Shown here: positions 6,657-48,197 of the stretch, one piece after another
Layout of the letters: each line of letters starts with the position of its first letter
How positions within the stretch are numbered: position 1 is the stretch's first letter
Virus record (IMG/VR): IMGVR_UViG_3300042391_000634
Location: 248,001-312,000 of that record
Length of the DNA: 64,000 nucleotides
Reading direction: 5' to 3' (one strand)
Notes under the pieces: generated by a model
What the model saw: only the letters and a program-made list of their open reading frames with translations
Database searches by the model: none
What the model was told of the DNA's origin: nothing
Translations under genes and position numbers: made by a program

Positions 6657-6657
6657 A

Positions 6658-28668: not shown

Positions 28669-30336
28669 ATGTATATAATAGGAATTTCAGCATTTTATCA
28701 CGATTCATCTGTTTGTTTATTCAGAGATAACCAATTAATATTTGCATGTGAAGAAGAGAAGTTCACAGGTATTAAACATGATGATTCGTTTCCAAAAAAA
28801 GCGTTGGAATATATCTACAAACAATATAAGATAACACCAAAGAATTTACAGGCGGTTTGTTATTATGAAGACCCACAATTGAAATATCAAAGAGTAATGG
28901 AAAACATTAAACCTCAATGGTTTAAGAATCCATTATATTCATTAAAATCTTATTTGAAAATACGTAATAATGTAAAAGAGATTGATAAGAAATTAAAGGA
29001 GATTTGTTCCACCGTATTTTATTCAACACATCACGAGGCTCATCAATATTATGCACATTATACATCACATTTTGAGGAGTCAACTTGTTTATCGGTTGAT
29101 GGTGTAGGTGAGATTGATACCGTATCATTAGGTGTTGCCGATTATAATGGAATCAAATACAGTTCACTTGCAAAGTATCCACATTCAATGGGTCTTTATT
29201 ACTCCGCATTAACCTCATATTTAGGGTTCAGACCAAACGAAGGAGAGTATAAGGTAATGGGATTAGCGTCCTATGGTGACCCCCAAAAGTATATTAAAGA
29301 GGTAAGAAACCTTATATCATTTAAATCAGGTAAGTTAGTATGTAATATGGATGTATTTTGTTGGAATAAGACAGATAAATCCATGTTCAATGAAAAACTT
29401 GCGGAACTATTAAGTGTTCCACAAAGATTACCCGAAGAAACTTTAGAACAAACACACAAAGATTTAGCGGCCGCTGTTCAATTAAGATATGAGGAAGTAT
29501 TGTTTGAAATTATTAAATCAATTAGACATGTAAGTAAAAGTCTAAACTTAACGTTGAGTGGTGGTTGTGCTTATAACGGAACCGCAAATGGTAAGATTAT
29601 TGATAAGACACACTTTACACATCTTTGGATACCACCCGCACCATCAGATGCAGGATCAGCAATCGGTGCTGTTGTTCATTATTTAGTTAAAGAACGTAAA
29701 GTAAGGAGTAAAATTACAAGAAGTCCATTTTTGGGTCCTGAATATTATTACGATTATATTAGACGTGCAATTGGTATGAACAACTTTAAAAAATATGAAT
29801 CTGAAAATAAATTAAGAACCCATATTGCTCAAAAAATATTTGAAGGTAAAGTAGTTGGGTGGTTTCAAGGACACATTGAATTTGGATCTCGAGCGTTAGG
29901 TAATAGATCTATTTTAGCTAATCCAACGTTTCCCGATATGAAAGATAGAATCAATAAGGTAATTAAAAAGAGAGAAGGTTTTAGACCATTCGCACCAATG
30001 GTTACTCAAGATAAACAACATCAATTCTTTGAAATGACGGATGATGTTCCATATATGAATCAAGTTGTTAAAGTTAAGGATGAATATAGAGACAAATTAC
30101 CGGCGGTAACACATGTAGACGGTAGTGCTAGAGTTCAAACAGTTTATAAACACACAATGATACATGATTTATTAATCGAATTTGAAAAATTAAGTGGTTA
30201 TCCAATTTTATTGAATACCTCATTCAATGTTAAAGATAAAACAATGGTATTAACACCAAAAGATGCCGTTGATACTTTCTTTGATACTGATATGGATATA
30301 TTAGTAATGGGTAATTATGTTATGTATAAAAATTAA
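28669..30336 (+). CDS. O-carbamoyltransferase (NodU/CmcH family)
   Basis: 'GISAFYHDS','EEE.F..IKH','HH.AH','DGVGE','EYKVMGLA.YG','EFGSRALGNRSILA','FRPFAP','HVDGSARVQTV','LNTSFN'. Confidence 0.95.
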   Translation: MYIIGISAFYHDSSVCLFRDNQLIFACEEEKFTGIKHDDSFPKKALEYIYKQYKITPKNLQAVCYYEDPQLKYQRVMENIKPQWFKNPLYSLKSYLKIRNNVKEIDKKLKEICSTVFYSTHHEAHQYYAHYTSHFEESTCLSVDGVGEIDTVSLGVADYNGIKYSSLAKYPHSMGLYYSALTSYLGFRPNEGEYKVMGLASYGDPQKYIKEVRNLISFKSGKLVCNMDVFCWNKTDKSMFNEKLAELLSVPQRLPEETLEQTHKDLAAAVQLRYEEVLFEIIKSIRHVSKSLNLTLSGGCAYNGTANGKIIDKTHFTHLWIPPAPSDAGSAIGAVVHYLVKERKVRSKITRSPFLGPEYYYDYIRRAIGMNNFKKYESENKLRTHIAQKIFEGKVVGWFQGHIEFGSRALGNRSILANPTFPDMKDRINKVIKKREGFRPFAPMVTQDKQHQFFEMTDDVPYMNQVVKVKDEYRDKLPAVTHVDGSARVQTVYKHTMIHDLLIEFEKLSGYPILLNTSFNVKDKTMVLTPKDAVDTFFDTDMDILVMGNYVMYKN

Positions 30337-31214: not shown

Positions 31215-31649
31215 ATGATATATTGGTTAACAGGACAACCCGGATCAGGTAAAACAACATTAGCATCATGGATACAGGCGAGTTTCCCAATTAAATCTAT
31301 GATAGTAGATGGGGACGATATCCGTGAGATATTTGTAAATAAAGATTATAGTGAGGAAGGTAGACGTAAAAATATAGAAAAGGCTCAGATTTTGGCTAAA
31401 TTCTTACACCATAAAGGGTATACTGTTATTGTATCGTTAGTTTCACCTTATAGAGATCAAAGAGAACAATTTAAGATTGAAATGGGGGATGATTTGATTG
31501 AAATTTATGTTCATACCACAAATATTAGAGGTAGAGAACAATTTCATGTTAATTATGAGGAACCCCAAACCTTTTTTATTGATTGTGATACAACGGATAG
31601 TTCCGAATATAACACATTTATGGAATTAAGAAGAAAATTAAAAATATAG
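31215..31649 (+). CDS. cysC: Adenylylsulfate (APS) kinase
   Basis: 'WLTGQPGSGKTT','DGDDIR','YSEEGR..NI','VSPY...R','YEEP'. Confidence 0.85.
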   Translation: MIYWLTGQPGSGKTTLASWIQASFPIKSMIVDGDDIREIFVNKDYSEEGRRKNIEKAQILAKFLHHKGYTVIVSLVSPYRDQREQFKIEMGDDLIEIYVHTTNIRGREQFHVNYEEPQTFFIDCDTTDSSEYNTFMELRRKLKI

Positions 31650-31652
31650 AAT

Positions 31653-32036
31653 ATGAGTAAAAAATATGCGATGTATGTGGGGCGTTGGCAAAATTGGCAT
31701 AAGGGTCATGAATGGCTCCTTAACCAACAATTAGAGAAGGGAAAAGATGTGTGGGTGGCAATTAGAAATGTGGAGATAGATGAGAATAATCCAAAAACTG
31801 CTCAACAGGTGATGATGGATTTATCAGATACTCAGTTCTTTAAAGAAAATTCACAAAGAATTAATATATCAATTATTCCAGACATTGAGAGTATCAATTA
31901 CGGTAGAGGAGTTGGATATGACGTTATTTACCACGAACCACCTGAAGAAGTAGCTAAAATTAGTGGTACAAGTATCAGAAACGGGTATATTGACTCAAAT
32001 GGAGATATTATTGAATATCCTAATATGAATAATTAA
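31653..32036 (+). CDS. HIGH-family (cytidylyltransferase-like) nucleotidyltransferase
   Basis: 'GRWQNWHKGH' and 'ISGTSIR'. Confidence 0.75.
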   Translation: MSKKYAMYVGRWQNWHKGHEWLLNQQLEKGKDVWVAIRNVEIDENNPKTAQQVMMDLSDTQFFKENSQRINISIIPDIESINYGRGVGYDVIYHEPPEEVAKISGTSIRNGYIDSNGDIIEYPNMNN

Positions 32037-32252
32037 ATGATAGTAGAACGTAAACGACATATAGCCAAAACCATTTCATATCGTATTGTGAGCACCCTAA
32101 TTGGATTTTTACTAATGTGGTTGATAAGTGGGTCGATTAAGGTCGGAGCGGCGTTTGGGTTAGCTGAATTAATTTATAAACCAATTCAATATTATGTTCA
32201 TGAAAGAATTTGGTATAAATTGATAAAATTTGGATTAAAAGATAAAAAATAA
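32037..32252 (+). CDS. DUF2061-like small membrane protein
   Basis: 'RHIAKTISYR..ST','YYVHERIW'. Confidence 0.8.
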   Translation: MIVERKRHIAKTISYRIVSTLIGFLLMWLISGSIKVGAAFGLAELIYKPIQYYVHERIWYKLIKFGLKDKK

Positions 32253-32261
32253 GTATTTATA
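32251..32261 (+). promoter_or_regulatory. Putative phage late-promoter motif AAGTATTTATA
   Basis: Identical 11-mer upstream of tail fibre (46140) and GAGTATTTATA upstream of 48279. Confidence 0.5.
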
Positions 32262-32279
32262 TACAAATAACAAAAAGAT

Positions 32280-33770
32280 ATGAGAACAGTATTGATAGGT
32301 TCGGACTTTATGTACGACAAAGATGGTAATTTAAAACCAATTGAAATAAATACATCAGTAGGTTGGGATGGTGCCGAAAAAGTAGAAGATGATGTAGATT
32401 GTTTAGATTTAACAAATTTATATCAATTTGTTGAGAATAACAATTTTCAAAATGTACATTATATTGGAAACATTGGTTTTTTTCACAAAACATTAGAAAC
32501 ACACTATAGTGGAAGTTCAGTTACATATGAATTTCATAGTGTTAGTGCAACTGCCATTACTATACCATATATCGAAGATACAACCGATGTATTAATTATT
32601 AGAAGTGCATATGATACGACCGCATTAGTAGATGATACATATTGTAGAGATAAAATTGAATTTCTTAAATTAATTAAAGATTCTTCATTTAGTTCTCAAT
32701 TTGTGTATAAAGATGAAACCAATACATTGGTTTCAAATATTACATCTATAAATGATAACGGTGAACATCCTAATTTTATACTTAAATCAATATTACCAAA
32801 TTACGATATATCATTATACCCAAAATATTTTAAAGTAACGAATCAATCGGAATTAGATACTATTATTGCAAATAATGTTACTACCAATTATTTCTTAATG
32901 GAATATTTGTATAATCCAACTAAAATTTGGGGGGGACATCTGACAGTAATAAGAAGTTTAAATTTATTAGTTCCACCAAATTTAGAATCAATTCAACTTG
33001 GACAATATACAAAATTAAATCAAAATATGTTATTGACAGGTGTAACATATAATCTAACCACATTAGAAGTTGATGCAGATTTTAGATCTAGTTATAGTAC
33101 ACTTCCAATAATAGACAATGTTCCTAAATTGTTAGATGCAGACATGGTAGAAATGGCGGATGGTTCATTTAAAACTGCGTTGGATTTACAAGTTGGTGAT
33201 AGTATTAAAACAATTGAAATTCCAAATCCGGCTGGAACTAGTATAGATAGTTATATATCATCCGAATTTGGTCTTACATATGAAACCTTATTAACTGATA
33301 CAATATACACAACCAATGTCATTACCAATAAACAAAAAGTAAACACTTTAACTTTTATACGTGAATTAGTATTTGACGATAATAGTACGTGGGAAGATAC
33401 ATCCGCTTCACGTTATTTGATAGATAGAGCGGGTGTGGTTATGTTTAAATCTTTATTTGGAATATTTGCAGGAGATGTAGTTTTATTGTTAGATACTACC
33501 GATGAGAATATAAATTTTGTAAGAAAAACTGTTGTATCAAATACTGAATTTAAAAGAGTTTTTTCTGGATGGTTTATTTCAGTTGAGAATGCAAAATTAT
33601 TCTTAACTAAAACTCCGGGTTCAACTAATAACGAATCATTTGTTTCAATTGAACATAATAGAGCTCCTTGTCCTACCTATGCATGTAATAGTGGATGTGG
33701 ATATTATTGTCCGTCTTGTCCAAAAAATCAATCATGTGCACCGGACAATGAGTGTTCACCAATTTGTTAA
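32280..33770 (+). CDS. Circularly permuted ATP-grasp domain + Hint-like domain + C-terminal Cys-rich peptide
   Basis: 'GSDFM..DG.LKPIEINT','HPNFILK','YFLMEYL'; Hint 'V.MADGSFK...LQVGD.I' and terminal HN (aa 459-460); 36-aa tail with 8 Cys. Confidence 0.7.
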   Translation: MRTVLIGSDFMYDKDGNLKPIEINTSVGWDGAEKVEDDVDCLDLTNLYQFVENNNFQNVHYIGNIGFFHKTLETHYSGSSVTYEFHSVSATAITIPYIEDTTDVLIIRSAYDTTALVDDTYCRDKIEFLKLIKDSSFSSQFVYKDETNTLVSNITSINDNGEHPNFILKSILPNYDISLYPKYFKVTNQSELDTIIANNVTTNYFLMEYLYNPTKIWGGHLTVIRSLNLLVPPNLESIQLGQYTKLNQNMLLTGVTYNLTTLEVDADFRSSYSTLPIIDNVPKLLDADMVEMADGSFKTALDLQVGDSIKTIEIPNPAGTSIDSYISSEFGLTYETLLTDTIYTTNVITNKQKVNTLTFIRELVFDDNSTWEDTSASRYLIDRAGVVMFKSLFGIFAGDVVLLLDTTDENINFVRKTVVSNTEFKRVFSGWFISVENAKLFLTKTPGSTNNESFVSIEHNRAPCPTYACNSGCGYYCPSCPKNQSCAPDNECSPIC

Positions 33771-33798
33771 TAATAATTCTTAAATAAAATAAAATAAA

Positions 33799-33888
33799 AT
33801 GGCAATCATAATATCAAATACCGATATCAATACTTTAAATACCACAATGACAACAATTGGTAGTTTAATAGTAACCGCAAACTCATAA
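33799..33888 (+). CDS. 29-aa Thr/Ser/Asn-rich peptide; not in ORF track
   Basis: MAIIISNTDINTLNTTMTTIGSLIVTANS; A-rich leader (AAAAT repeats) before ATG; fills gap in operon. Confidence 0.6.
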   Translation: MAIIISNTDINTLNTTMTTIGSLIVTANS

Positions 33889-33920
33889 TGATTTATTAAT
33901 CATTTAATAATTAGTTATAT

Positions 33921-34451
33921 ATGATACACCTTATAAAAGGTATATTAACAAAAGAAGAATGTAACATTCTTAAAAACCAGTTTGATATTGATAAACAAAT
34001 CAATCCATCACTAGATAAATCAAAGGTTACAGGTAACACCTATGGGTATGAACCTTCTTATATTTTCAATGAATATTTAGATAAACTTAAATCATCTGTT
34101 TTAAAACTTAATTATAAAATAGATGATTTAAGAAATGTCAATTCATATATCAGAGAATACAAAAATAATGATTTTTTAAAAAAACATAGAGATAGAGACG
34201 ATATTAGTGTTACTATGTCGATATGTGTAGAATCAACAATAAATAAAGTTTGGCCATTAAATGCTGAAATTGATGATATAGAATATTCTTTTAACACAAA
34301 TGTAGGCGATGCTATTGTGTTATTTGATGCGGATAAAATATATCATTGGAGAGATATTTTAATTTGTAATCAAAATGAAAGAGTAATACAATTCTTTTTA
34401 CATTGGACACCCATTATACAGATTACCAAAAAAATAAAAACAATAATATAA
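33921..34451 (+). CDS. 2OG-Fe(II) oxygenase
   Basis: 'LTKEEC','R.Y....L.KHRD','ISVT','GDA','HWR','Q.FLHW'. Confidence 0.8.
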   Translation: MIHLIKGILTKEECNILKNQFDIDKQINPSLDKSKVTGNTYGYEPSYIFNEYLDKLKSSVLKLNYKIDDLRNVNSYIREYKNNDFLKKHRDRDDISVTMSICVESTINKVWPLNAEIDDIEYSFNTNVGDAIVLFDADKIYHWRDILICNQNERVIQFFLHWTPIIQITKKIKTII

Positions 34452-34996
34452 TGAATTATAATTTTAAATATTATGGCCAAGTAGATGTATCTAATATCGA
34501 TAATTTAATTGTAAATACCCAATTAAATTGGGATGAATACACATATAGACAAACCGATAGATATGGTCAATCCGATACTAAAACAATACCATTATTATGG
34601 TCTGAAGATTTTGTTGAAAATATAACTTGGAAATCTTATGAAATTTTTAAAGATAGTTTAATTGAAATAGAAAATAATTTAATCAATTTATTGGGAGAAG
34701 GTAAAATTGAAGTTGCACTATTAATTAATTTACCAAAAAATAAAAAAATATTACCACACATAGATTCTGGATATGAACATTTTTTTAAAACTAAAAGAAT
34801 ACATATACCAATTACAACAAATGATAAATGTAACTTTATGGTTGGTGAAGAAATTGTACAAATGAAACTAGGTGAAATATGGGAAATTGATAATGCAAAT
34901 AAAGTACATGGTGTTAATAATGATGGGAATACTGATAGAATTCATTTATTAATAGACTATCAAATTTCTGACAAAAAAATAAAAACATTATTATAA
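34451..34996 (+). CDS. Aspartyl/asparaginyl beta-hydroxylase-like oxygenase
   Basis: 'ILPHID','RIHIPITTN','GEIWEIDN..VHGVNN.G.TDRIHLLID'; ATG 34451 overlaps upstream TAA. Confidence 0.85.
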   Translation: MNYNFKYYGQVDVSNIDNLIVNTQLNWDEYTYRQTDRYGQSDTKTIPLLWSEDFVENITWKSYEIFKDSLIEIENNLINLLGEGKIEVALLINLPKNKKILPHIDSGYEHFFKTKRIHIPITTNDKCNFMVGEEIVQMKLGEIWEIDNANKVHGVNNDGNTDRIHLLIDYQISDKKIKTLL

Positions 34997-35009
34997 ACAA
35001 AAATAAATT

Positions 35010-35591
35010 ATGGCATTTACATATACAATAGTTCCTGAATTTTTAACAAAAGAAGAATGTAATATAATATTAAATTTTTCATTAAAAGAATTAAAATTAG
35101 AACCATCTCAAATTGTTACTCATTATATGGGTGGTAATGTTGATACCGATATAAGGAAGTCAAATCAAGTATTTTTTCCATATTATAAAGAATTTCCATT
35201 TTTATTAGAAAAAATGAGTAAATTGTTAAATAAACATATTGACGTTAAAGGATTTGATTTGGATTATGAACATAGTCAATTTCAATTTACAGAGTATAAT
35301 TCAGGTGACCATTTTGGTTGGCATAGAGATGTAATTGGTGAAAAAATTACAAATTATGATAGATATTGTTCGTTAGTGATACAATTAAATGATGAATATG
35401 AAGAAGGTGATTTACAAATAAAAGATATAGAAGATAAAACATTAACAGTTGAAAAAGGTGTTGGCAATTTAATATTATTTTTATCTAATATTGAACATAG
35501 AGTAGTGCCAGTAAAAAGTGGAGTTAGATACACATTAGTTAATTGGGTAAAATTAATGGAAAAAAAAGATTATAAAAAAACATTATTATGA
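35010..35591 (+). CDS. 2OG-Fe(II) oxygenase (PKHD/prolyl-hydroxylase-like)
   Basis: 'QFTEY..GDHFGWHRD','QLNDEYEEGDL','F.S..EHRV.PV.SG.RYTLV.W'. Confidence 0.9.
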   Translation: MAFTYTIVPEFLTKEECNIILNFSLKELKLEPSQIVTHYMGGNVDTDIRKSNQVFFPYYKEFPFLLEKMSKLLNKHIDVKGFDLDYEHSQFQFTEYNSGDHFGWHRDVIGEKITNYDRYCSLVIQLNDEYEEGDLQIKDIEDKTLTVEKGVGNLILFLSNIEHRVVPVKSGVRYTLVNWVKLMEKKDYKKTLL

Positions 35592-35592
35592 T

Positions 35593-35904
35593 ATGAAATT
35601 AGATTTTAAAGAAATATTCACAGCTTGGTATAATGTTGTAAATCATACTCCTGAACAAAGGGAGTTGGCAGATAAAAGATTTGCAATATGTTTAGAATGT
35701 CCATCTAAAAAAGAAATATTAGAAGGTAAAGAATGGTCTTTAAAATGTGGAGAATGTGGTTGCCCATTAAAGGCGAAAGTTTATACAAAAAAAACATATA
35801 ACAATAAAGATGGTTCATGTCCACTTAATAAATGGAAAGAAATTGAAATAGAATATATAAGTAATGTCAAAACCAATTATAAAACCAAAAAAACAATTAT
35901 ATAA
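35593..35904 (+). CDS. Small Cys-rich metal-binding protein (DUF6171-like)
   Basis: 'R.AICLECP','CGECGC.L.AK','CPL.KW'. Confidence 0.6.
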   Translation: MKLDFKEIFTAWYNVVNHTPEQRELADKRFAICLECPSKKEILEGKEWSLKCGECGCPLKAKVYTKKTYNNKDGSCPLNKWKEIEIEYISNVKTNYKTKKTII

Positions 35905-35906
35905 CA

Positions 35907-36596
35907 ATGTCGTACTTAATAAACGATAATCTTATATGGATAATTACACCCAAATGTGCTAGCAATTCAATAGAAACAGCCCTATTAAATTCAAATTTAA
36001 AGTTAAAAACGTATAACGATACGTTAGATCCAAAATCACATATACATATACCTTTAAATGATTCATTAAATTATTTTGGTAATAAAGAAACTGTATGCAT
36101 TACCAGAGATTGGTTTGGAAAATGGTTAAGTGCATTGAATTTTATTTGGGACATAATTGAATTTTATTGGGGGTTTACACCTATTTGTAAATGGGAAGAT
36201 ATTGATAATGATTTCATATATAATACATTCGATACGGAATTTTTGAATCATTTACATTGGATAAATGATGAGGGATATGAAAAATGTATAATTAAATTAT
36301 TAAAAATTAATCAGGACGAAATTAATAACATACCAAAAAATTTACCACCAGTAGTTATGGTTTTAATTTCTGAAAAATACTATAAAAGTAATCAAAAATG
36401 TACGTATGAATTTGATATTAAAGAGTTAGATAAATTTGTTAAATTTATTGAAGATAGGTTTGGTGAAAAAATACAATTAGATAATTTAAACACATCGACG
36501 AAAAGACCAAATAAAATAATAATAAACGATGAGTTAAAATCTTTTGTTTGGGAAAAATTTGAAAAACCATTTGAAAAACGAAATCAATTAATTTAA
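35907..36596 (+). CDS. Sulfotransferase family 2-like protein
   Basis: 5'-PSB-like 'ITPKCASNSI' and 3'-PB-like 'TRDW...WLS'. Confidence 0.65.
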   Translation: MSYLINDNLIWIITPKCASNSIETALLNSNLKLKTYNDTLDPKSHIHIPLNDSLNYFGNKETVCITRDWFGKWLSALNFIWDIIEFYWGFTPICKWEDIDNDFIYNTFDTEFLNHLHWINDEGYEKCIIKLLKINQDEINNIPKNLPPVVMVLISEKYYKSNQKCTYEFDIKELDKFVKFIEDRFGEKIQLDNLNTSTKRPNKIIINDELKSFVWEKFEKPFEKRNQLI

Positions 36597-36597
36597 T

Positions 36598-37266
36598 ATG
36601 GCAACTCTTTGGACATTTGGAGATTCGTTTACTGCAGGTGATGGTTGTGTGCAAAATATAGCAATTAGGGATGGTGATTTTAAATATTATAATGAATATA
36701 AACAATCGGATAGTGATATATGGTCAAATATATTAAGTAAAACTATTGGATTTGAAGTAAAAAATATGGGAAAAAGTGGAGCAAGTAATGATTATATTTT
36801 AGATTCTATTATTGACAATTTTGATATGATAGAACCAAATGATGTGGTTATAATTGAAAAAACATTTTACCAAAGATTTGATATTCCTAAATCTGGTGGT
36901 GATATATTCCAAACAATTTATGCTGAGGGCATCTACCAACTTTCTATTGATTTAAAAATGAACAGATACTTTTGTGAAGATAAATTAGAAAGTGAAACAA
37001 TATTAAATTATGGTGTTTTATTTGCTGGTCATAAATTATTTAAACAAAGACACGATAAACGATTTAAATTTATAAAAACCCAATTGAATAACAAAGGAAA
37101 CAAAATATTAATGTGGGACGTATTGGATGTTTTAAATGGTAAATTTGAAACAATATCGGAACATACAAAAGGTAAAATAAAAGATTATCATTTTAGTTTT
37201 AATGGTCACAAAACATTTAGTGAACTTTTATTTAAAAAATTATACACCAAACCCGAATTAATTTAA
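36598..37266 (+). CDS. SGNH-like protein
   Basis: 'WTFGDSFTAG','GKSGASN','DYHFSFNGH'. Confidence 0.65.
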   Translation: MATLWTFGDSFTAGDGCVQNIAIRDGDFKYYNEYKQSDSDIWSNILSKTIGFEVKNMGKSGASNDYILDSIIDNFDMIEPNDVVIIEKTFYQRFDIPKSGGDIFQTIYAEGIYQLSIDLKMNRYFCEDKLESETILNYGVLFAGHKLFKQRHDKRFKFIKTQLNNKGNKILMWDVLDVLNGKFETISEHTKGKIKDYHFSFNGHKTFSELLFKKLYTKPELI

Positions 37267-38319
37267 ATGAACAATCAAGTTGAGTTAAAGAATTATTTTT
37301 GTAGTGTACCATTTACATCATTAGAAATACATAATAATGTTTGTTTTGTTTGTTGTCCATCTTGGTTACCAAACAAAGTGGAACTTAGTGAAATTCCTTT
37401 AAAAGATGTTTACAATAGTGAACCAATTATAGATATTAGAAATTCTATTTTAGACGGTTCGTTTAAATATTGTAGTAAAGAGCTTTGTCCTTATTTAAGT
37501 AAATTAGTAAACTTTGGAGTAACATCAGGACCCGTTACATTAAAATCACATTCAAATATTAATAGCCCTATTATAGAAAATAATACACCGAATGATTTAA
37601 TAATGAATTTTGACAGGACTTGTAATTACAAATGTCCATCATGTAGAGTAGATTTAATTGTTGAAAATAGTGAAGGAATACAAAGAGTTGAAAAAACAAT
37701 TGAAGATATTGACACATATTATTCAAAATATGTAAAAACTTTGTATATAACAGGATCAGGCGACCCATTTGTTTCAGTTGGATTTAGAAATTATCTAAGA
37801 AATTTTAATCCTAAAAAATACCCAAATTTATCATCAATACATTTTCACACCAACGCATCTATGTGGAATAAAGAAATGTGGGATAGTATGCCAAATGTAC
37901 ATAAATATGTTCATACGTGTGAAATTAGTATAGATGCCGGCACCAAAGATACTTACGAAAATAAAACGAGATTAGGTGGTAATTGGGAAAACTTATTAAA
38001 TAATTTAAAATTTATTAGCACTTTACCACATATGAATGTAAAAACGTCATTTGTTGTTCAAGATACAAATTATACTGAAATGGAAACCTTTTATAATTTA
38101 ATGTATTCTATATTTGGCAAAAGAGTAAATGTATTTTTTGGTAAGATAACTAATTGGGGAACATTTTCTGACGGTGAATTTAAATTAAAACAGGTATGGG
38201 ATACCGAACATCCAGAACACATGTTATTTAAAAAAGAATTTAATAAAATATGGAAAAATCAAAACCTTTTTCATAACTTATATGAATTCATAGACAATAC
38301 ACATACATCGTTGATATGA
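37267..38319 (+). CDS. Radical SAM protein with N-terminal SPASM/twitch-like Cys cluster
   Basis: 'CSVPF','VCCPSW','C...CP'; CNYKCPSC; 'GSGDPF','TNA','ISIDA'. Confidence 0.85.
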   Translation: MNNQVELKNYFCSVPFTSLEIHNNVCFVCCPSWLPNKVELSEIPLKDVYNSEPIIDIRNSILDGSFKYCSKELCPYLSKLVNFGVTSGPVTLKSHSNINSPIIENNTPNDLIMNFDRTCNYKCPSCRVDLIVENSEGIQRVEKTIEDIDTYYSKYVKTLYITGSGDPFVSVGFRNYLRNFNPKKYPNLSSIHFHTNASMWNKEMWDSMPNVHKYVHTCEISIDAGTKDTYENKTRLGGNWENLLNNLKFISTLPHMNVKTSFVVQDTNYTEMETFYNLMYSIFGKRVNVFFGKITNWGTFSDGEFKLKQVWDTEHPEHMLFKKEFNKIWKNQNLFHNLYEFIDNTHTSLI

Positions 38320-38336
38320 TAGTGAAATAAAAAATA

Positions 38337-39467
38337 ATGGAAGATAATATTTTAAATAAAAAAATAAATATAAATTTTATAGACGGACCTTTTGTTAAAA
38401 TAATAGAAGATACTACATTACATTATAAAATTGAATTTATTGATAGAGATGACAATAAAATTATTTTTGAAATAGATTTAATAAGTAATAAATGGGCCAA
38501 ATGTTCAAAAAAATACTTTGTAAATTGGTTAATTAAAATAAAAGGTATTGATAATGATTTTTATTATGAACATACTTTTGATTTAAACAAAAAAAGAGTT
38601 TTTGTTTTTTTAGAATCACACTTACTTGGAGATACCTTAGCTTGGATTGATCAAGTCGATAGATTTAGAATAAAAAATAAATGTGAGGTGATATGTGCAA
38701 CATCCCATAATAATATCTTCAAAGAACAATACCCCAATATTCAATTTACATCACCTACTTTACCTAAATCAAATGAGTCTGATTTTTATGCACTATATCG
38801 ATTAGGGGTTTGGCGTATTAATGATGTAATCGATATGGATAGACATAAAATTGATCCAAGAAAATTACCATTAATACAAGTTGGTTCTGATATTTTAGGA
38901 ATTAATTATAAAGAAACAAAACCAAAATTAGCAAACTTAGGTAAAACAAAACAAAAACTAGTTACAATAGGATTTCACGGTGGAGGACAATTTAAATATT
39001 GGAATAACCCGACAGGATGGCAAGAAGTTGTGAATTTTTTAAATTTAGAAGGATATGAGGTTAGATTATTATCAAATGAAGAAGATGGTTATATGGGTAA
39101 TCGGCCACCAAATGGTATAACTAAACAACCAAATGGACCATTAAGTGAAATAATTAAAGTTTTACAAGAATCTGTTTTATTTATCGGTATTAGTAGTGGT
39201 TTAAGTTGGTTATCTTGGGCGGCTGGAACACCAACAATAATAATATCGGGATTTACAGATATTCATTTAGAACCAATAAATGGAATAACAAGAATCATTA
39301 ATAAAGATGTATGTAATAGTTGTTGGTCTAAATATGAATTTAAACCTCATAATTGGTATTGGTGTCCTGTTTATGCCGGTACTGAAAATAGATTTGAGTG
39401 TTCTAAATCAATAACTGGTGAAGTGGTAATTAAAAAAGTAAAAAATTTAATTAATAATTTATCATGA
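38337..39467 (+). CDS. TibC/Aah-like protein O-glycosyl(heptosyl)transferase
   Basis: 'LGDTLAW','KYWNNPTGW.EVV','FIG.SSGLSWL.WA','ISGFT', iron-finger-like 'CNSCW..WCP..FEC'. Confidence 0.75.
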   Translation: MEDNILNKKININFIDGPFVKIIEDTTLHYKIEFIDRDDNKIIFEIDLISNKWAKCSKKYFVNWLIKIKGIDNDFYYEHTFDLNKKRVFVFLESHLLGDTLAWIDQVDRFRIKNKCEVICATSHNNIFKEQYPNIQFTSPTLPKSNESDFYALYRLGVWRINDVIDMDRHKIDPRKLPLIQVGSDILGINYKETKPKLANLGKTKQKLVTIGFHGGGQFKYWNNPTGWQEVVNFLNLEGYEVRLLSNEEDGYMGNRPPNGITKQPNGPLSEIIKVLQESVLFIGISSGLSWLSWAAGTPTIIISGFTDIHLEPINGITRIINKDVCNSCWSKYEFKPHNWYWCPVYAGTENRFECSKSITGEVVIKKVKNLINNLS

Positions 39468-39757
39468 TTTTAAAAGAAAAAATATTATTTAGTAAAGAGG
39501 AGTGTCAATCCATTATTTTTTATGGGGGCAATAATATTACAAATTGGGATATTAAAGATAGAAAATATCATTCACAGCCAATTACATATTCGTTGGGAAA
39601 CAAATGGTTATTTGATAAACTTAAAAAATTTTTTGAAGAACAACTAAACGCTCAAATAAAAAAAAATAAAGAAGTTATTCATTTTCATAAATTTGTAAAA
39701 GGTGATTGGTTTTTAGAAAACGAACATATAAAAATAGAAACAAATAAATTAATATGA
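39464..39757 (+). pseudogene. Internally deleted 2OG-Fe(II) oxygenase
   Basis: N-terminal 'LFSKEEC' and 'FHKFVKGDWF' then jumps to C-tail; HxD and distal His absent. Confidence 0.6.
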
Positions 39758-40557
39758 AACCATTAAAATATTGGAAAAATGACACATTTGAAATATCATC
39801 ATATCAATATAAATTGGAAGATAGGGTAAATAAAAAATATCCCACATCTGGTTCGGATAATAGTGGTAAATGTCTTTATACTTACAATGAACTTGGTTTT
39901 AGAGGTGATAGTATTAAGAAACAAGGGTTTAAAGTAATGTCATTAGGTTGTTCAGTTACCGAAGGTGTTGGTGTAAATGACAATCAAACGTGGTCATCAC
40001 AATTTGTAAATTTATTAACTAATGGGGTTGATATGAATTTTGGTACAGGAGGTAGAAGTAATGACTTTATTTCGAGATGCTTATTATCATATTATGATAT
40101 CATAAAACCAGATTTAGTTTTAGTTATGTATACTTCACCAACTAGAAGAGAATATTATACCGAAAATAATGGAGTTGAACCATTTGTGGTTGGTAGTAAA
40201 TGGGGTTGGTATGAACACCAAGAAGATGGTAGAAAGGCACATAAAATGTTATTTGAATTACAAAATGATAATGAAGATTTTATCAATTGGTATAAAAATC
40301 ATTTATTAATTAAATATTTTTTAGAGTCTAAAGGTTGTAATTGGTTATGGAATGGTTGGTTTGACATACCAAAAGAATATGAAGAATTTAATAGATTTGA
40401 TGGTGGTTATGAAAGATTTTTAGATTTAGGTGTAGATAATGGGCATCCAGGTCCAAACCACAATAAAACCTATGCACACAAACTACATGATTTTATAACA
40501 AAAAATTTCCCAAACTACATAAATAATTTACCGAAAAATAAGCAAAATTTGATTTGA
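39754..40557 (+). CDS. SGNH-like protein
   Basis: 'YNELGFRG','LGCSVTEGVG','G.GGRSND.I','D.GHPGP'. Confidence 0.6.
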   Translation: MKPLKYWKNDTFEISSYQYKLEDRVNKKYPTSGSDNSGKCLYTYNELGFRGDSIKKQGFKVMSLGCSVTEGVGVNDNQTWSSQFVNLLTNGVDMNFGTGGRSNDFISRCLLSYYDIIKPDLVLVMYTSPTRREYYTENNGVEPFVVGSKWGWYEHQEDGRKAHKMLFELQNDNEDFINWYKNHLLIKYFLESKGCNWLWNGWFDIPKEYEEFNRFDGGYERFLDLGVDNGHPGPNHNKTYAHKLHDFITKNFPNYINNLPKNKQNLI

Positions 40558-46169: not shown

Positions 46170-48197
46170 ATGAAAATATTTGACGCAAACATCTCTGGAT
46201 CACTAAACGTATCGGGCTCAGCCCATTTCTTTAATGATCTTACAGTAGACGGAACACTAAACGCCACCATCAGTGGAACATCCACAAACGCACTATCCTT
46301 AAACACAACGGGTTCCGCTCGTTTTGCTACAACAGGTAGTAACGTATTTAAAGCCGACCAAACAATTAGCGGTTCACTTTATGTGACTACCGATATAATA
46401 TTAAATGGACAATCATATACTGGACAAACTTCTGGTACATCAGGAACTAGTGGATCTAACGGTTCTTCAGGAACCTCAGGATCTAGTGGATCTAACGGTT
46501 CTTCAGGAACCTCAGGATCTAGTGGTTCAGATGGTTCTTCAGGAACTTCAGGAACATCAGGTTCTTCAGGATCTAACGGATCTAGTGGAACATCAGGTTC
46601 TTCAGGATCTAACGGATCTAGTGGAACATCAGGATCTAGTGGTTCTAACGGTTCTTCAGGAACATCAGGTTCTTCAGGATCTAACGGATCTAGTGGAACA
46701 TCAGGATCTAGTGGTTCTTCAGGAACATCAGGAACTAGTGGTTCTTCAGGAACTGCGGGTACATCAGGTTCTTCAGGTACCGTTACCTTATCAGGAACAC
46801 AAGACAATGGTTTATTAACACTTAATGGATCTTCTCCAAATGTGTCTGTAGAATCTAATTTAACATATGACGGATCTTTATTTAAGGTTAATTCAAACAC
46901 AACAATTACAGGTTCATTGACCATTACCGCAAACTTAAACGTTTTAGGTTCTTCATCAATCACATATACTACTGCATCTCAATTAAGAGTAAATGATAAT
47001 GTTATAACGGTTAATACCGCATCGCCAGGTGTAAGATTTGGTGGTTTATCTGTAATGGATAGTGGATCAAATAGTAGTACGGGATCTATATTTTGGGATT
47101 CATTAAATAACAGATGGGTATATCAACAAGAATCAGGATCATCTTACACAGGTGGTATCATAATGTCTGGTCCAAGAAACAATGGGGCTTTAGGAAGTGA
47201 AACTACTTTAACAAACAATAAAGTTGCAAAATCTACGGGTGGAGATCATCTTGGTGATAGTAATATCAGTGACGACGGAACGACGGTTACAATTAGTACA
47301 AATACAGAAATTACAGGTTCATTAAAGGTAACAAATGGTATCACAGGTACTTTAACAGGTAATATCACAGGTAATGCGGCAACGGTAACAACAAATGCTA
47401 ACTTAACAGGTAATGTAACCTCAGTTGGTAATTCAACGACAATAGCTGCGGGAGTTGTAACCGATTCAATGTTAGCTGGTTCTATATCAAACGCTAAATT
47501 AACTAACTCATCTGTAACGGTTTCGGCAGGAACAGGTATGAGTGGTGGTGGTGCGGTATCATTAGGTGGTACAGTGACATTAACAAACGCGGGTGTAACC
47601 TCAATCACAACAAATACAGGATTAAGTTCAAACGTAGGTGCAACAGGTGCGGTTACGATTACAAATACAATAACCAATAACAACCAATTAACAAATGGTG
47701 CGGGATATCTTTCAACCGCCGTAACCTCAGCAGTGGCTGGTACGGGTGTTGGGGTAAGTGCAGCAACAGGAGCCGTAACATTCTCAATCGGTCAAGCGGT
47801 AGCAACATCATCAAACGTTCAATTTAACTCATTGGGTGTAGGAACTGCGGGACCAGTAACAGCAGGTTTAATCAGAGCAACAAATGATGTTATTGCGTTC
47901 TACGGTTCTGATGAAAGACTAAAAGAAAACATCACACCAATTGAAAATTCCTTAGATATCTTAAAACAAATAAATGGTTATTACTTCGATTGGAAGGAAA
48001 TGCCAGGTATTCATGAGAACGAAGGTCATGATATAGGGGTTGTAGCACAAGAAATTGGTGCTGTTTTACCTGAAATCGTAACAACAAGAGAGAATGGTTA
48101 TATGGCCGTTAAATACGAAAAATTAGTTGCATTGTTAATTCAAACAAACAAAGAATTATTAAATCGTGTTGAGGCTTTAGAAGCTAAAATAAAATAA
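46170..48197 (+). CDS. Tail fibre protein with Gly-X-Y Ser/Thr repeat and C-terminal intramolecular chaperone (Peptidase S74)
   Basis: 'SDERLKENI','GVVAQE...PE.V','V.YEKLVALLI...KEL' coiled coil; Thr/Gly/Ser-rich shaft. Confidence 0.85.
   Translation: MKIFDANISGSLNVSGSAHFFNDLTVDGTLNATISGTSTNALSLNTTGSARFATTGSNVFKADQTISGSLYVTTDIILNGQSYTGQTSGTSGTSGSNGSSGTSGSSGSNGSSGTSGSSGSDGSSGTSGTSGSSGSNGSSGTSGSSGSNGSSGTSGSSGSNGSSGTSGSSGSNGSSGTSGSSGSSGTSGTSGSSGTAGTSGSSGTVTLSGTQDNGLLTLNGSSPNVSVESNLTYDGSLFKVNSNTTITGSLTITANLNVLGSSSITYTTASQLRVNDNVITVNTASPGVRFGGLSVMDSGSNSSTGSIFWDSLNNRWVYQQESGSSYTGGIIMSGPRNNGALGSETTLTNNKVAKSTGGDHLGDSNISDDGTTVTISTNTEITGSLKVTNGITGTLTGNITGNAATVTTNANLTGNVTSVGNSTTIAAGVVTDSMLAGSISNAKLTNSSVTVSAGTGMSGGGAVSLGGTVTLTNAGVTSITTNTGLSSNVGATGAVTITNTITNNNQLTNGAGYLSTAVTSAVAGTGVGVSAATGAVTFSIGQAVATSSNVQFNSLGVGTAGPVTAGLIRATNDVIAFYGSDERLKENITPIENSLDILKQINGYYFDWKEMPGIHENEGHDIGVVAQEIGAVLPEIVTTRENGYMAVKYEKLVALLIQTNKELLNRVEALEAKIK
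46434..46784 (+). repeat. Coding tandem repeat: 39 Gly-X-Y triplets (GSS/GTS/GSN) with a 36-nt higher-order unit
   Basis: Repeated GGTTCTTCA/GGAACATCA/GGATCTAGT/GGATCTAAC; unit GSNGSSGTSGSS. Confidence 0.95.

What the first reader, a model, noticed from the sequence alone, without database searches (positions are those of the whole stretch)
32251..40557. Candidate new phage peptide-modification system: permuted ATP-grasp-Hint-Cys-peptide polyprotein followed by a tailoring operon
Seen: ORF 32280-33770 begins GSDFM..LKPIEINT and later has PNFILK and YFLMEYL. It then has a Hint-type block A (KLLDADMVEMADGSFK..LQVGD), His459-Asn460, and RAPCPTYACNSGCGYYCPSCPKNQSCAPDNECSPIC (36 aa, 8 Cys). Downstream and co-oriented are a 29-aa peptide, three intact 2OG oxygenases (one Asp/Asn beta-hydroxylase-like), a CxxC protein, a sulfotransferase, SGNH proteins, a SPASM-like radical SAM and a TibC-like GT. 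Known: that ATP-grasp motif order is the circularly permuted arrangement of eukaryotic glutathione synthetase (RSDYM..IEINT, FVLKP, YILME). Hint domains cleave after a terminal Asn. ATP-grasp, SPASM radical SAM and 2OG enzymes are RiPP tailoring enzymes. Inference: the ligase carries its own self-released Cys-rich substrate, which the neighbouring enzymes then modify. I know no described system with this architecture. The putative late promoter suggests the product is linked to the virion or to lysis.
Basis: partly seen in the sequence, partly recalled or inferred. Interest (0 to 1): 0.92.

Follow-up and report, generated by a model that had tools for sequence, protein, structure and literature searches.

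The report
Self-cleaving ligase-peptide precursor of jumbo phages
A widespread, undescribed phage protein joins a glutathione-synthetase-like ligase to an intein-like self-cutting domain and a fast-evolving cysteine-rich peptide; it always sits beside a tiny conserved peptide gene and a zinc-ribbon gene, so it looks like a new way for viruses to make and possibly attach small modified proteins.

Summary
ORF 32280-33770 (496 aa) has no Pfam, PHROG, NCBIfam or PDB sequence match. Its AlphaFold models (pLDDT 84; N-domain 92) show an ATP-grasp domain closest to eukaryotic glutathione synthetase, then a Hint/intein fold ending in His459-Asn460, then a 36-aa tail with 8 Cys.

- **Family size:** at least 770 homologues and 364 clusters at 50% identity, all viral or metagenomic.
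- **Conserved residues:** D9, E22, N24, R108, D118, K169 and R225 are invariant, and HN is about 97% conserved. Hint position 1 is never Cys.
- **Tail:** hypervariable (dN 5-7x the body), with 6 or 8 Cys and one near-universal Lys.
- **Distant relatives:** they keep the module but carry other cargo. Some have a Cys-rich segment closed by a second Hint or by a Peptidase_S74 domain. Others carry 700-1200-aa BACON arrays or almost nothing.
- **New partners:** a 24-30-aa ORF follows the gene in 57 of 58 loci, and a zinc-ribbon gene lies nearby in 55 of 57.
- **Frequent neighbours:** 2OG oxygenase, sulfotransferase, PAPS genes and radical SAM. Distant loci have tail-sheath genes nearby.

Cleavage, ligase substrate and tailoring are inferred, not shown. 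The late promoter and the SPASM label are not supported.

The parts
32280..33770 (+). Focal precursor gene (496 aa): ATP-grasp, then Hint, then Cys-rich tail
   Evidence: ORF confirmed. At least 770 homologues. AF2 model pLDDT 84, pTM 0.79.
32280..33116 (+). Glutathione-synthetase-type (circularly permuted) ATP-grasp domain, aa 1-279
   Evidence: AF2 pLDDT 92. Foldseek: 1m0t yeast GSH synthase 2e-6, 7uk6 YjfC 2e-5, 5oev GS-like 8e-5, RimK 0.046. D9, E22, N24, R108, D118, K169 and R225 are invariant in 115 diverse representatives.
33126..33659 (+). Hint (intein-like) domain, aa 283-460, with no N-terminal nucleophile (K283) and ending in His459-Asn460 (nt 33654-33659)
   Evidence: Foldseek: 6y75 BIL2 1.7e-7, 1mi8 DnaB intein, 1at0 Hedgehog, 2lwy BIL, target TM 0.70-0.75. 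H459 in 109 of 113 and N460 in 111 of 113 representatives; position 283 is never Cys.
33660..33767 (+). Predicted released cargo: 36-aa hypervariable tail with 8 Cys and the conserved C-P-K motif (K482)
   Evidence: Tails of 171 homologues: 6 or 8 Cys in nearly all, at least one Lys in 170, CPK in 113. Tail dN is 5-7x that of the body.
33799..33888 (+). Universal small peptide gene (29 aa here), ending I-G-x-L-I-V-x-x-N-S
   Evidence: Present 12-58 nt after the focal stop in 57 of 58 non-redundant loci; G, L, I and the terminal N-S are nearly invariant. Related small ORFs occur in distant types.
35593..35904 (+). Universal zinc-ribbon partner (103 aa; six invariant Cys plus K and W)
   Evidence: Within 2.2 kb of the focal gene in 55 of 57 loci and directly adjacent in 30. 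Invariant C33, C36, C52, C55, C57, C76. Weak profile matches to zinc ribbons of TFIIB and RPB12 and to a DC1-like domain.
35010..35591 (+). Prolyl-hydroxylase-type 2OG-Fe(II) oxygenase; frequent neighbour
   Evidence: PF13640 6e-14. Present in 32 of 43 loci.
33921..34451 (+). Second 2OG-oxygenase-like protein (176 aa; H-x-D and a distal His seen by eye)
   Evidence: PHROG 2954 and 3531 only; 3531 is also hit by the 2OG oxygenase. Present in 17 of 43 loci.
34451..34996 (+). Asp/Asn beta-hydroxylase-like cupin; accessory. The ATG at 34451 is the likelier start; the ORF list gives a TTG at 34403.
   Evidence: PF05118 4e-12. Present in only 2 of 43 loci.
35907..36596 (+). Sulfotransferase-like protein (229 aa; PK-x-x-S-x-S loop and R-D..S motif)
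   Evidence: No Pfam hit itself. Homologues carry faint Sulfotransfer_2 hits. Present in 28 of 43 loci.
36598..37266 (+). GDSL/SGNH hydrolase; accessory
   Evidence: PF00657 3e-5. Present in 8 of 43 loci.
37267..38319 (+). Radical SAM enzyme with an N-terminal Cys-rich part and no SPASM domain
   Evidence: PF04055 at cut-off. N_Twi_rSAM 1e-15, below cut-off. Present in 20 of 43 loci at about 87% identity. Also precedes the cassette in L090.
38337..39467 (+). GT9 / TibC-like glycosyltransferase; accessory
   Evidence: PF01075 4e-7, TibC_1st 8e-4. Present in 2 of 43 loci.
39464..40557 (+). Two frequent neighbours of unknown function (97 aa and 267 aa; the 267-aa one has a G-x-S-x-x-x-G block like SGNH hydrolases)
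   Evidence: Present in 25 of 43 and 23 of 43 loci. No family hit.
31215..32252 (+). Upstream trio: APS kinase, 127-aa nucleotidyltransferase, DUF2061 membrane protein (probable PAPS supply)
   Evidence: PF01583 4e-19 and PF09834 9e-17. Adenylyltransferase-like. Upstream in about 19 of 37 loci and in distant types.
28669..30336 (+). Carbamoyltransferase; frequent upstream neighbour
   Evidence: Carbam_trans_N and Carbam_trans_C, 1e-60 or better. Present in 18 of 37 loci and in distant types.

Best explanation
The gene encodes a single-use, self-processing precursor of large myophages.

**Proposed steps.** The Hint domain has lost the N-terminal nucleophile that splicing needs but keeps the C-terminal His-Asn. 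Asn460 is therefore expected to cyclise and cut the Asn460-Arg461 bond. That frees the variable C-terminal cargo, here a 36-aa Cys-rich mini-protein with a free amino terminus. The fused ATP-grasp domain looks catalytically intact. It is expected to make an ATP-dependent amide (or ester) bond during maturation or attachment of that cargo, and the universal small peptide and the zinc-ribbon protein are its likely partners. The frequently linked enzymes probably tailor the product: a prolyl-hydroxylase-type 2OG oxygenase, a sulfotransferase with PAPS-supply genes, a radical SAM enzyme and sugar enzymes. The near-invariant C-P-K is the obvious target site. The end product is most likely exposed on or associated with the virion.

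**Shown:** the folds, the invariant residues, the cargo variability and the gene linkage.

**Inferred:** cleavage, ligase activity and its substrates, tailoring of the cargo, and the virion location.

**My sub-estimates:** cleavage at HN 0.8; active ligase 0.75; cargo or small peptide is the ligase substrate 0.5; neighbours modify the cargo 0.4; virion-associated product 0.5.
For: - **Fold.** The Hint fold is found with E 1e-7 to 1e-6 and target TM 0.70-0.75. The ATP-grasp fold is nearest to glutathione synthetases.
- **Residues.** D9, E22, N24, K169, R108, D118 and R225 are invariant, and HN is 97% conserved, in 115 representatives that share as little as 20-30% identity.
- **Cargo behaves as a separate, exchangeable unit.** Of 114 representatives, 67 have short Cys-rich tails, 9 have a Cys-rich segment plus a second true Hint starting with Cys (Intein_splicing 58 bits, PT-HINT 49 bits), and 8 have a Cys-rich segment plus Peptidase_S74 from profile position 1. 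A further 14 carry 90-300-aa cargo, 6 carry 540-1240-aa cargo (BACON Pfam hits in two of them) and 3 have stubs of 5-7 aa.
- **Tail evolution.** Tail dN is 0.26-0.34 against 0.048 for the body in 10 independent close pairs.
- **Tail composition.** Cys counts are almost always even and one Lys is kept.
- **Cassette linkage.** The small peptide is present in 57 of 58 loci and the zinc ribbon in 55 of 57. The cassette is duplicated as a unit on one contig (L038 and L062).
- **Neighbourhood.** It is conserved even around distant types.
- **Virion link.** Tail-sheath genes lie 0.1-6 kb downstream in L081, L084 and L090. A tail-fibre gene lies at 46170-48197 in the window.
Against: - No biochemical data exist, and no sequence-profile membership was found in any ATP-grasp or Hint Pfam family for the window protein.
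- TM-scores to glutathione synthetase are low (0.37-0.46 of the query, rmsd 9-12 A).
- The Arg that precedes the first Mg-binding Asp in classical ATP-grasp enzymes is an invariant Gly or small residue here (the mapping is from my knowledge of the family).
- 62 of 171 tails have no Asp or Glu. A graspetide-type side-chain ligation inside the tail therefore cannot be general.
- Members with a second Hint still keep the ATP-grasp, so a simple 'activate the cargo C-terminus' role would be redundant there.
- Cargo-less members exist.
- The sugar, sulfate and carbamoyl genes could serve a glycan pathway unrelated to the cargo, since the whole 64-kb window is glycan genes.
- Disulfides would not form in a bacterial cytoplasm, so the even Cys count could instead reflect metal sites.
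Confidence: 0.55

Rival explanations
1. The true ligase substrate is the small conserved peptide, not the Cys-rich tail. The ATP-grasp would modify or ligate the 24-30-aa Thr-rich peptide, using either its conserved Glu/Asp or its conserved C-terminal N-S carboxylate. This would work like a graspetide precursor or a LysW/Pup-type carrier. The Hint-released cargo would then be only the acceptor, or an independent passenger.
For: The small ORF is more conserved than the tail and is present in 57 of 58 loci. It has invariant G, L, I and a terminal N-S, and an acidic residue in 55 of 57. It persists next to cargo-less and large-cargo members. LysX/ArgX and RimK, which act on C-termini of small proteins, appear among the weaker fold matches. 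Lys is kept in almost every tail and in the stubs after HN.
Against: There is no direct evidence of interaction. In distant types the C-terminal dipeptide changes (H-S, L-Q, S-K), so a strict C-terminal recognition motif is not universal. Graspetide ligases are RimK-like rather than GS-like (from my knowledge of that family).
Confidence: 0.2
2. The system is an effector or bacteriocin-like system built on the polymorphic-toxin plan. The Hint releases a diffusible, disulfide-rich antimicrobial or host-acting peptide, or a larger effector. A downstream gene would provide protection.
For: A Hint domain placed directly before a hypervariable C-terminal module is the layout of PT-HINT polymorphic toxins, and distant homologues give weak PT-HINT hits. 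The tail evolves fast. Small Cys-rich peptides are often antimicrobial (general knowledge).
Against: There is no secretion or trafficking domain; the N-terminus is an enzyme. The genes downstream are conserved rather than varying with the tail. The large cargo is made of BACON/Ig-like arrays, and some cargo ends in a tail-fibre-type S74 chaperone; both point to structural or adhesive roles. The loci sit in tail-gene regions. The tail matches no known toxin fold or family.
Confidence: 0.12
3. No cleavage occurs. The protein is an amidoligase of the surrounding glycan pathway, for example adding an amino acid or amine to a sugar acid. The Hint fold would be a structural spacer and the Cys-rich tail a metal-binding or docking module.
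For: The gene lies inside about 64 kb of sugar-nucleotide, glycosyltransferase, carbamoyl and sulfate genes, including a UDP-glucose dehydrogenase. The even Cys numbers and a CxxC motif fit zinc sites. The bacterial cytoplasm disfavours disulfides.
Against: Near-total conservation of the catalytic His-Asn at the exact domain end is hard to explain without cleavage. So are a tail replaced by unrelated cargo of 5 to 1240 aa, and second self-cleaving domains at the far end of the Cys-rich segment. The cassette also occurs without the glycan context, next to tail genes (L090).
Confidence: 0.1
4. The Hint is a decayed mobile intein left inside an otherwise ordinary gene, and the tail is a remnant C-extein.
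For: Phage genomes often carry inteins, and the fold matches inteins.
Against: There is no homing endonuclease, no N-terminal nucleophile and no +1 nucleophile. The Hint is at the same position in all 364 clusters, under strong purifying selection (body dN/dS 0.14). No intein-less allele was seen.
Confidence: 0.02

Closest known systems
Eukaryotic-type glutathione synthetase (circularly permuted ATP-grasp; PDB 1m0t, 5oev)
   Same: It is the best structural match to aa 1-279 in sequential alignment. The motif order is the same: the Asp..Glu-x-Asn metal-site hairpin comes first, then the Lys strand (PNFILK), then the L-M-E hinge. Glutathione synthetase activates a C-terminal carboxylate of a small peptide (from my knowledge).
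   Different: There is no sequence-profile match. The domain has about 280 aa against about 470, and TM is only 0.37-0.46. The Arg of the R-S-D-Y-M motif is Gly here. The domain is fused to a Hint domain and the substrates are unknown.
Bacterial intein-like (BIL) domains and PT-HINT of polymorphic toxins
   Same: It has a Hint fold (2lwy and 6y75 are among the top hits) with a C-terminal His-Asn, placed directly before a hypervariable C-terminal module. It has no homing endonuclease and no +1 nucleophile, so it is expected to cleave rather than splice.
   Different: It lacks the N-terminal Cys/Ser entirely. The upstream partner is an enzyme rather than a trafficking or filament domain. The host genome is a phage. 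The downstream genes are conserved and not immunity-like.
BUBL loci of ciliates (BIL - ubiquitin-like domain - BIL), a 'single-ubiquitin-dispensing platform' (PMC8616854)
   Same: The subfamily with Hint1-HN, a Cys-rich segment and then a Cys1 Hint2 has the same layout: a small domain bounded by two Hint domains. In BUBL that layout gives ATP-independent conjugation of the small domain's C-terminus to a Lys.
   Different: The window protein has no second Hint. The bounded unit is a Cys-rich peptide rather than a ubiquitin fold. An ATP-grasp domain is present in addition.
Borosin-type RiPPs (for example OphMA), where the enzyme carries its own substrate as a C-terminal tail (from my knowledge)
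   Different: The borosin enzyme is a methyltransferase and release needs a separate protease. Here release would be built in through the Hint, and self-modification is unproven.
Graspetides (microviridin-type ATP-grasp RiPPs) and the LysW/LysX or RimK systems
   Same: An ATP-grasp ligase sits next to a small peptide or protein gene. RimK and LysX/ArgX appear as weak fold matches.
   Different: Those ligases are not permuted. 62 of 171 tails lack any Asp or Glu. There is no leader/core organisation shown.
Endosialidase / tail-fibre intramolecular chaperone (Peptidase_S74)
   Same: One subfamily ends its Cys-rich segment with an S74 domain matched from profile position 1, which is the self-cleavage site. 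The window's own tail-fibre gene, 46170-48197, also ends with S74.
   Different: S74 is not present in the window's focal protein.

Membership tests
ATP-grasp superfamily, glutathione-synthetase-type permuted branch | ATP-grasp three-dimensional fold | tested here: met
   The AF2 N-domain model (pLDDT 92) matches 1m0t at 2e-6, 7uk6 at 2e-5, 5oev at 8e-5, then RimK, LysX/ArgX and PurK weakly. TM is only 0.37-0.46.
ATP-grasp superfamily, glutathione-synthetase-type permuted branch | Metal-site Asp / Glu-x-Asn hairpin and ATP-binding Lys conserved | tested here: met
   D9, E22, N24 and K169 are invariant in 115 diverse representatives. Their assignment to the Mg and ATP sites is by analogy, not by a solved complex.
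ATP-grasp superfamily, glutathione-synthetase-type permuted branch | Permuted order, with the metal-site hairpin N-terminal to the Lys strand and hinge | tested here: met
   The order D9..E22-x-N24, then K169, then L206-M207-E208 is read directly from the sequence. The best sequential structure alignments are to glutathione synthetases.
ATP-grasp superfamily, glutathione-synthetase-type permuted branch | Match to a curated sequence profile of the family | tested here: not met
   No Pfam, NCBIfam or PHROG hit at E up to 0.1. No PDB sequence or profile hit.
ATP-grasp superfamily, glutathione-synthetase-type permuted branch | ATP-dependent carboxylate-amine ligation | not testable with these tools
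   Needs an enzyme assay.
Hint / intein superfamily | Hint fold | tested here: met
   6y75, 1mi8, 1at0 and 2lwy match at 1e-7 to 4e-6 with target TM 0.70-0.75. There is also a weak profile hit to the AXH domain, which I recall shares a Pfam clan with the Hint families.
Hint / intein superfamily | C-terminal His-Asn (block G) | tested here: met
   H459 in 109 of 113 and N460 in 111 of 113 representatives; invariant in 47 loci.
Hint / intein superfamily | N-terminal Cys/Ser/Thr nucleophile at position 1 | tested here: not met
   Position 283 is Lys here. Across the family it is His, Leu, Lys or Ile, Ser in 7, and never Cys.
Hint / intein superfamily | +1 Cys/Ser/Thr on the C-extein, needed for splicing | tested here: not met
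   +1 is Arg here and highly variable (F, Y, L, A, G, S, V, P and others) in 171 tails. It is therefore not a splicing intein.
Hint / intein superfamily | Match to a curated Hint profile | tested here: inconclusive
   The window protein has none. Distant homologues give PT-HINT at 21 bits and Hom_end_hint at 14 bits, both below cut-off, for the first Hint.
Hint / intein superfamily | Autocatalytic cleavage | not testable with these tools
   Needs expression of wild type against N460A.
RiPP gene cluster (graspetide or radical-SAM/SPASM type) | Conserved donor and acceptor residues (Asp/Glu with Lys/Thr/Ser) in the core peptide | tested here: not met
   For the tail, Lys is conserved but 62 of 171 tails have no Asp or Glu. 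For the small peptide, an acidic residue is found in 55 of 57 along with many Thr, so this remains open for that peptide.
RiPP gene cluster (graspetide or radical-SAM/SPASM type) | SPASM or twitch C-terminal domain in the radical SAM maturase | tested here: not met
   No SPASM Pfam hit, and no Cys in the last 70 aa. The N-terminal-twitch family match is at 58 bits against a cut-off of 170.
RiPP gene cluster (graspetide or radical-SAM/SPASM type) | Tailoring enzymes genetically linked to the precursor | tested here: met
   2OG oxygenase in 32 of 43 loci, sulfotransferase-like in 28 of 43, radical SAM in 20 of 43. Whether they act on the peptide is not shown.
Polymorphic toxin system | N-terminal secretion or trafficking domain and a variable immunity gene downstream | tested here: not met
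   The N-terminus is an ATP-grasp domain. The downstream genes are a conserved small peptide and a zinc ribbon.

The most novel reading that the evidence does not exclude
The cassette is an ATP-driven protein-ligation machine, an ATP-dependent counterpart of protein splicing or ubiquitin-like tagging. The nucleophile-less Hint only unmasks an amine by Asn cyclisation. The fused glutathione-synthetase-type ATP-grasp activates a peptide carboxylate, either the conserved C-terminus of the small peptide or that of the cargo. The result is a new peptide or isopeptide bond, or a head-to-tail ring. Phages would use this to build or install hypervariable Cys-rich knots and BACON-type adhesins on the virion.
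Probability: 0.2. Interest if true: 0.95.

Novelty: new variant of a known kind. Interest (0 to 1): 0.82.

Why it matters
- **A new way to make a peptide.** If cleavage and ligation are confirmed, this is a precursor whose 'leader' is an enzyme plus a built-in Hint protease. Its payload is swapped freely between phages. I found no description of such an architecture in Pfam, PHROGs or NCBIfam, among cultured phages, or in the searched literature.
- **It is common.** The family has hundreds of sequence clusters, on viral contigs up to 335 kb.
- **It evolves fast at one end.** That is the signature expected of a host- or environment-facing molecule.
- **It could be useful.** It would add a natural single-polypeptide release-and-ligate module to the protein-engineering toolbox alongside inteins and sortases.
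- **It assigns a role to unexplained genes.** It would give a first function to a large block of sulfate, hydroxylase and sugar genes in uncultured jumbo phages.

Tried and rejected
- **Sequence searches of the focal protein** found nothing meaningful: Pfam, PHROGs, NCBIfam, and PDB with both a single sequence and a profile. The only hits were weak ones to symplekin and AXH.
- **Cultured phages.** tblastn and megablast against 50,697 phage records gave no match.
- **Cellular genomes.**
  - The first GTDB scan found nothing.
  - A scan with distant members found only two MAG contigs. One of them carries tail sheath and tube genes. I saw no clear cellular copy.
- **BFVD fold search** found Hint-containing viral proteins but no clear full-length equivalent. 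The best match has TM 0.29.
- **The tail alone against PDB** gave nothing.
- **T4-type late promoter** was rejected: the motif is on the wrong strand and is under-represented in the window. Sigma-70-like and terminator scans are uninformative in this AT-rich DNA.
- **Positive selection.** Crude Nei-Gojobori estimates give tail dN/dS of 0.38, or 0.52 without Cys codons, so the ratio is not above 1. Tail dS is also about twice that of the body, which may reflect recombination or alignment error.
- **Giant-virus origin** was considered because of eukaryote-like GT7, Anp1 and DUF5672 genes. I rejected it in favour of a myophage because of overlapping operon-like genes, tail-fibre PHROG hits and sheath genes in related loci.
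- **The small peptide as a split-intein C-fragment** was considered, because it ends in A-N-S. I dropped the idea because distant versions end in H-S, L-Q or S-K.

Full report
**Origin and setting**

The window is part of IMG/VR contig IMGVR_UViG_3300042391_000634 (335,630 bp). Locus L001 matches it at 100% identity. It has about 29% GC and no tRNA genes.

Nearly every gene with a family match belongs to sugar-nucleotide or glycan chemistry:
- epimerases and dehydratases, and a UDP-glucose dehydrogenase;
- glycosyltransferases of families GT1, GT2, GT4, GT7 and GT9;
- FkbM methyltransferases and a carbamoyltransferase;
- an APS kinase.

A collagen-repeat protein ending in Peptidase_S74 (46170-48197) matches many phage tail-fibre PHROGs. 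Related loci carry tail sheath genes. I therefore read the source as a jumbo myophage. No cultured phage has a relative of the focal gene. A first scan of 185,579 species genomes found none either.

**The observation**

ORF 32280-33770 and all quoted motifs are present.
- The radical SAM protein has no SPASM domain.
- The 'sulfotransferase' is supported only by its phosphosulfate-loop-like motif and by faint Sulfotransfer_2 hits in homologues.
- The TibC_1st match is below its cut-off.
- The TATAAATA upstream lies on the minus strand and the motif is rarer than chance in the window.

**What the protein is**

Sequence profiles are silent. An alignment of 47 homologues of 40-100% identity gave an AlphaFold model with mean pLDDT 84 and pTM 0.79.

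Residues about 283-460 match solved Hint domains. These include BIL2 of the Tetrahymena BUBL locus, the DnaB intein, the Hedgehog autoprocessing domain and a clostridial BIL, at E 1e-7 to 4e-6 and target TM 0.70-0.75.

A separate model of aa 1-279 (pLDDT 92) matches these structures:
- yeast glutathione synthase, 2e-6;
- E. coli YjfC, 2e-5;
- a nematode glutathione-synthetase-like protein, 8e-5;
- RimK, LysX/ArgX and PurK, more weakly.

The TM-scores are modest (0.37-0.46). I treat the fold assignment as sound but the exact subfamily as provisional. The Asp9..Glu22-x-Asn24 hairpin comes first, then Lys169 in PNFILK, then the L-M-E hinge.

**Conservation**

The family is large. At least 770 clusters at 90% identity were found, nearly all 485-505 aa. 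A further search found 364 clusters at 50% identity.

In 115 diverse full-length representatives, D9, E22, N24, R108, D118, K169 and R225 are invariant. H459 is present in 109 of 113 and N460 in 111 of 113. The first Hint position is never Cys, and the residue after Asn is highly variable.

This is therefore not a splicing intein. The only intein-type reaction it retains the residues for is C-terminal cleavage by Asn cyclisation. That step is inferred from how inteins and BIL domains work, not shown.

**The tail**

In all 80 IMG/VR loci the body ends in E-H-N (Q-H-N once), followed by a Cys-rich tail. The tails show these features:
- **Cys count.** Of 166 short tails, 124 have 8 Cys, 35 have 6, and only 2 have an odd number.
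- **Lys.** Of 171 tails, 170 have at least one Lys, 134 have exactly one, and 113 have it as C-P-K.
- **Acidic residues.** 62 of 171 tails have no Asp or Glu.
- **Position of Cys.** The first Cys is usually the fourth residue. The last Cys is at or next to the C-terminus.

Over ten independent close pairs the body has dN 0.048 and dN/dS 0.14. The tail has dN 0.26 (0.34 without Cys codons) and dN/dS 0.38-0.52. The tail is thus hypervariable on a fixed Cys/Lys scaffold, but I could not show dN/dS above 1.

The even Cys count fits either disulfides or metal sites, and I cannot choose between them.

**Cargo diversity in distant relatives**

This is the strongest new evidence for release. The profile search shows that the ATP-grasp plus Hint..HN module is constant, while what follows it is not. 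Of 114 full-length representatives, 107 have an aligned HN and were classified:

| Cargo after HN | Count |
|---|---|
| Short Cys-rich tail | 67 |
| Cys-rich segment, then a second Hint | 9 |
| Cys-rich segment, then Peptidase_S74 | 8 |
| 90-300-aa cargo | 14 |
| 540-1240-aa cargo | 6 |
| Stub of 5-7 aa | 3 |

- The second Hint begins with Cys and again ends in H-N. It matches Intein_splicing at 58 bits and PT-HINT at 49 bits, both above cut-off.
- The Peptidase_S74 domain is matched from profile position 1, which is its self-cleavage site. Two of these matches are above cut-off.
- Among the large cargoes, two of the four scanned (P0176, P0186) give BACON Pfam hits.
- The stubs are Lys-containing.

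A segment bounded on both sides by self-cleaving domains is hard to read as anything other than an excised product. The two-Hint form has the layout of the ciliate BUBL loci, where a BIL domain conjugates the enclosed domain to a Lys without ATP (PMC8616854).

**Partners**

- It starts 12-58 nt after the focal stop in 57 of 58 non-redundant loci.
- It is 24-30 aa long.
- It ends ..I-G-x-L-I-V-x-x-N-S.
- It has an acidic residue at one position in 55 of 57.

Related small ORFs flank the distant types, including cargo-less and large-cargo members.

The 103-aa CxxC protein lies within 2.2 kb in 55 of 57 loci and is directly adjacent in 30. It has six invariant Cys plus Lys and Trp. It weakly resembles zinc ribbons.

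One contig carries two full cassettes with different tails (L038 and L062). The core is therefore three genes: precursor, small peptide and zinc ribbon.

Other neighbours are frequent but not universal:

| Neighbour | Loci |
|---|---|
| 2OG oxygenase | 32 of 43 |
| Sulfotransferase-like | 28 of 43 |
| 97-aa protein | 25 of 43 |
| 267-aa protein | 23 of 43 |
| Radical SAM (about 87% identical) | 20 of 43 |
| APS kinase / nucleotidyltransferase / DUF2061 / carbamoyltransferase (upstream) | about 19 of 37 |
| AspH-like | 2 of 43 |
| TibC-like | 2 of 43 |

The same neighbourhood surrounds the two-Hint, S74 and cargo-less types. In a GC-richer MAG contig the order is radical SAM, small peptide, zinc ribbon, precursor, tail sheath, tail tube.

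**How it most likely works**

*Shown:*
- the two folds;
- the invariant candidate catalytic residues;
- the exchangeable cargo;
- the three-gene linkage;
- the location near tail genes.

*Inferred:*
- Asn460 cyclises and frees the cargo.
- The ATP-grasp makes an amide or ester bond involving the cargo, the small peptide, or both.
- The linked oxygenase, sulfotransferase, radical SAM and sugar enzymes decorate the product, with C-P-K as the likely site.
- The product ends up on the virion.

Which carboxylate and which amine the ligase joins cannot be decided from sequence. Four points bear on it:
- Tails often lack Asp and Glu, so a graspetide-type link inside the tail is not general.
- The small peptide has a conserved acid and a conserved C-terminus.
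- Nearly every tail or stub keeps a Lys.
- Cleavage creates a new amino terminus next to the ligase.

**Comparison and novelty**

The parts are known: a glutathione-synthetase-type ATP-grasp, a BIL/PT-HINT-like Hint, and S74. The idea of an enzyme carrying its own substrate also has a precedent in borosins.

The combination was not found in any library or in the searched literature. That combination is a ligase fused to a nucleophile-less Hint and a swappable cargo, with a universal mini-peptide and a zinc ribbon, in phages.

I rate it a new variant of a known kind (Hint-released polymorphic cargo with a RiPP-like neighbourhood). I see a real chance that the chemistry is new.

Noticed in passing
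window 33799-33888 and the equivalent position in L002-L080: The 29-aa ORF is far more conserved than the Cys-rich tail and is present in 57 of 58 loci. Gene callers probably miss it. L072 seems to carry a truncated copy (..T-I-G-G-L then a stop).
   Followed up: yes
window 46170-48197: A collagen-repeat protein ends in a Peptidase_S74 chaperone and matches many tail-fibre PHROGs. It causes the local GC rise to 0.38 in an otherwise 0.29 window.
   Followed up: partly
window 3811-5226 and 5223-6656: Two adjacent paralogues combine a eukaryote-type beta-1,4-galactosyltransferase (Glyco_transf_7N and 7C) with a Laminin_G_3 lectin-like domain. This is unusual for a phage.
   Followed up: no
window 14823-17435 (minus strand): An 870-aa fusion of two NAD-dependent epimerase/dehydratase domains, with a weak 2OG-FeII_Oxy_3 match (below the Pfam cut-off) between them.
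   Followed up: no
window 6640-9462: A 940-aa protein has a radical SAM domain only in its C-terminal third. The rest has no family match. Seven related loci carry homologues.
   Followed up: no
window 37267-38319 versus loci: The radical SAM gene is about 87% identical across loci whose focal proteins are only 45-75% identical. It is the most conserved gene of the neighbourhood.
   Followed up: partly
L038 and L062 (same contig, IMGVR_UViG_3300042892_005961): One 211-kb contig carries two complete cassettes (precursor, small peptide, zinc ribbon) with unrelated tails of 8 Cys and 6 Cys.
   Followed up: partly
L090:6171-12607 (MAG labelled uncultured Anaeromicropila sp.): A GC-richer contig binned as a bacterial genome carries radical SAM, small peptide, zinc ribbon and precursor directly before tail sheath and tube genes. 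It is probably a phage or prophage contig, and it hints at a Firmicutes host for that branch.
   Followed up: partly
window 31653-32036: A 127-aa HIGH-motif nucleotidyltransferase always sits between the APS kinase and DUF2061. It might be a minimal ATP-sulfurylase-like enzyme completing PAPS synthesis. This was not tested.
   Followed up: no
window 59247-59939: A strong match (1e-58) to a PHROG annotated as DNA methyltransferase lies at the edge of the glycan region.
   Followed up: no
L086:1234-2439 and L087:459-1664 (cargo-less relatives): A Trp_halogenase-type flavin enzyme sits two genes upstream of the cargo-less precursor. This suggests that different tailoring sets accompany different cargo types.
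   Followed up: no
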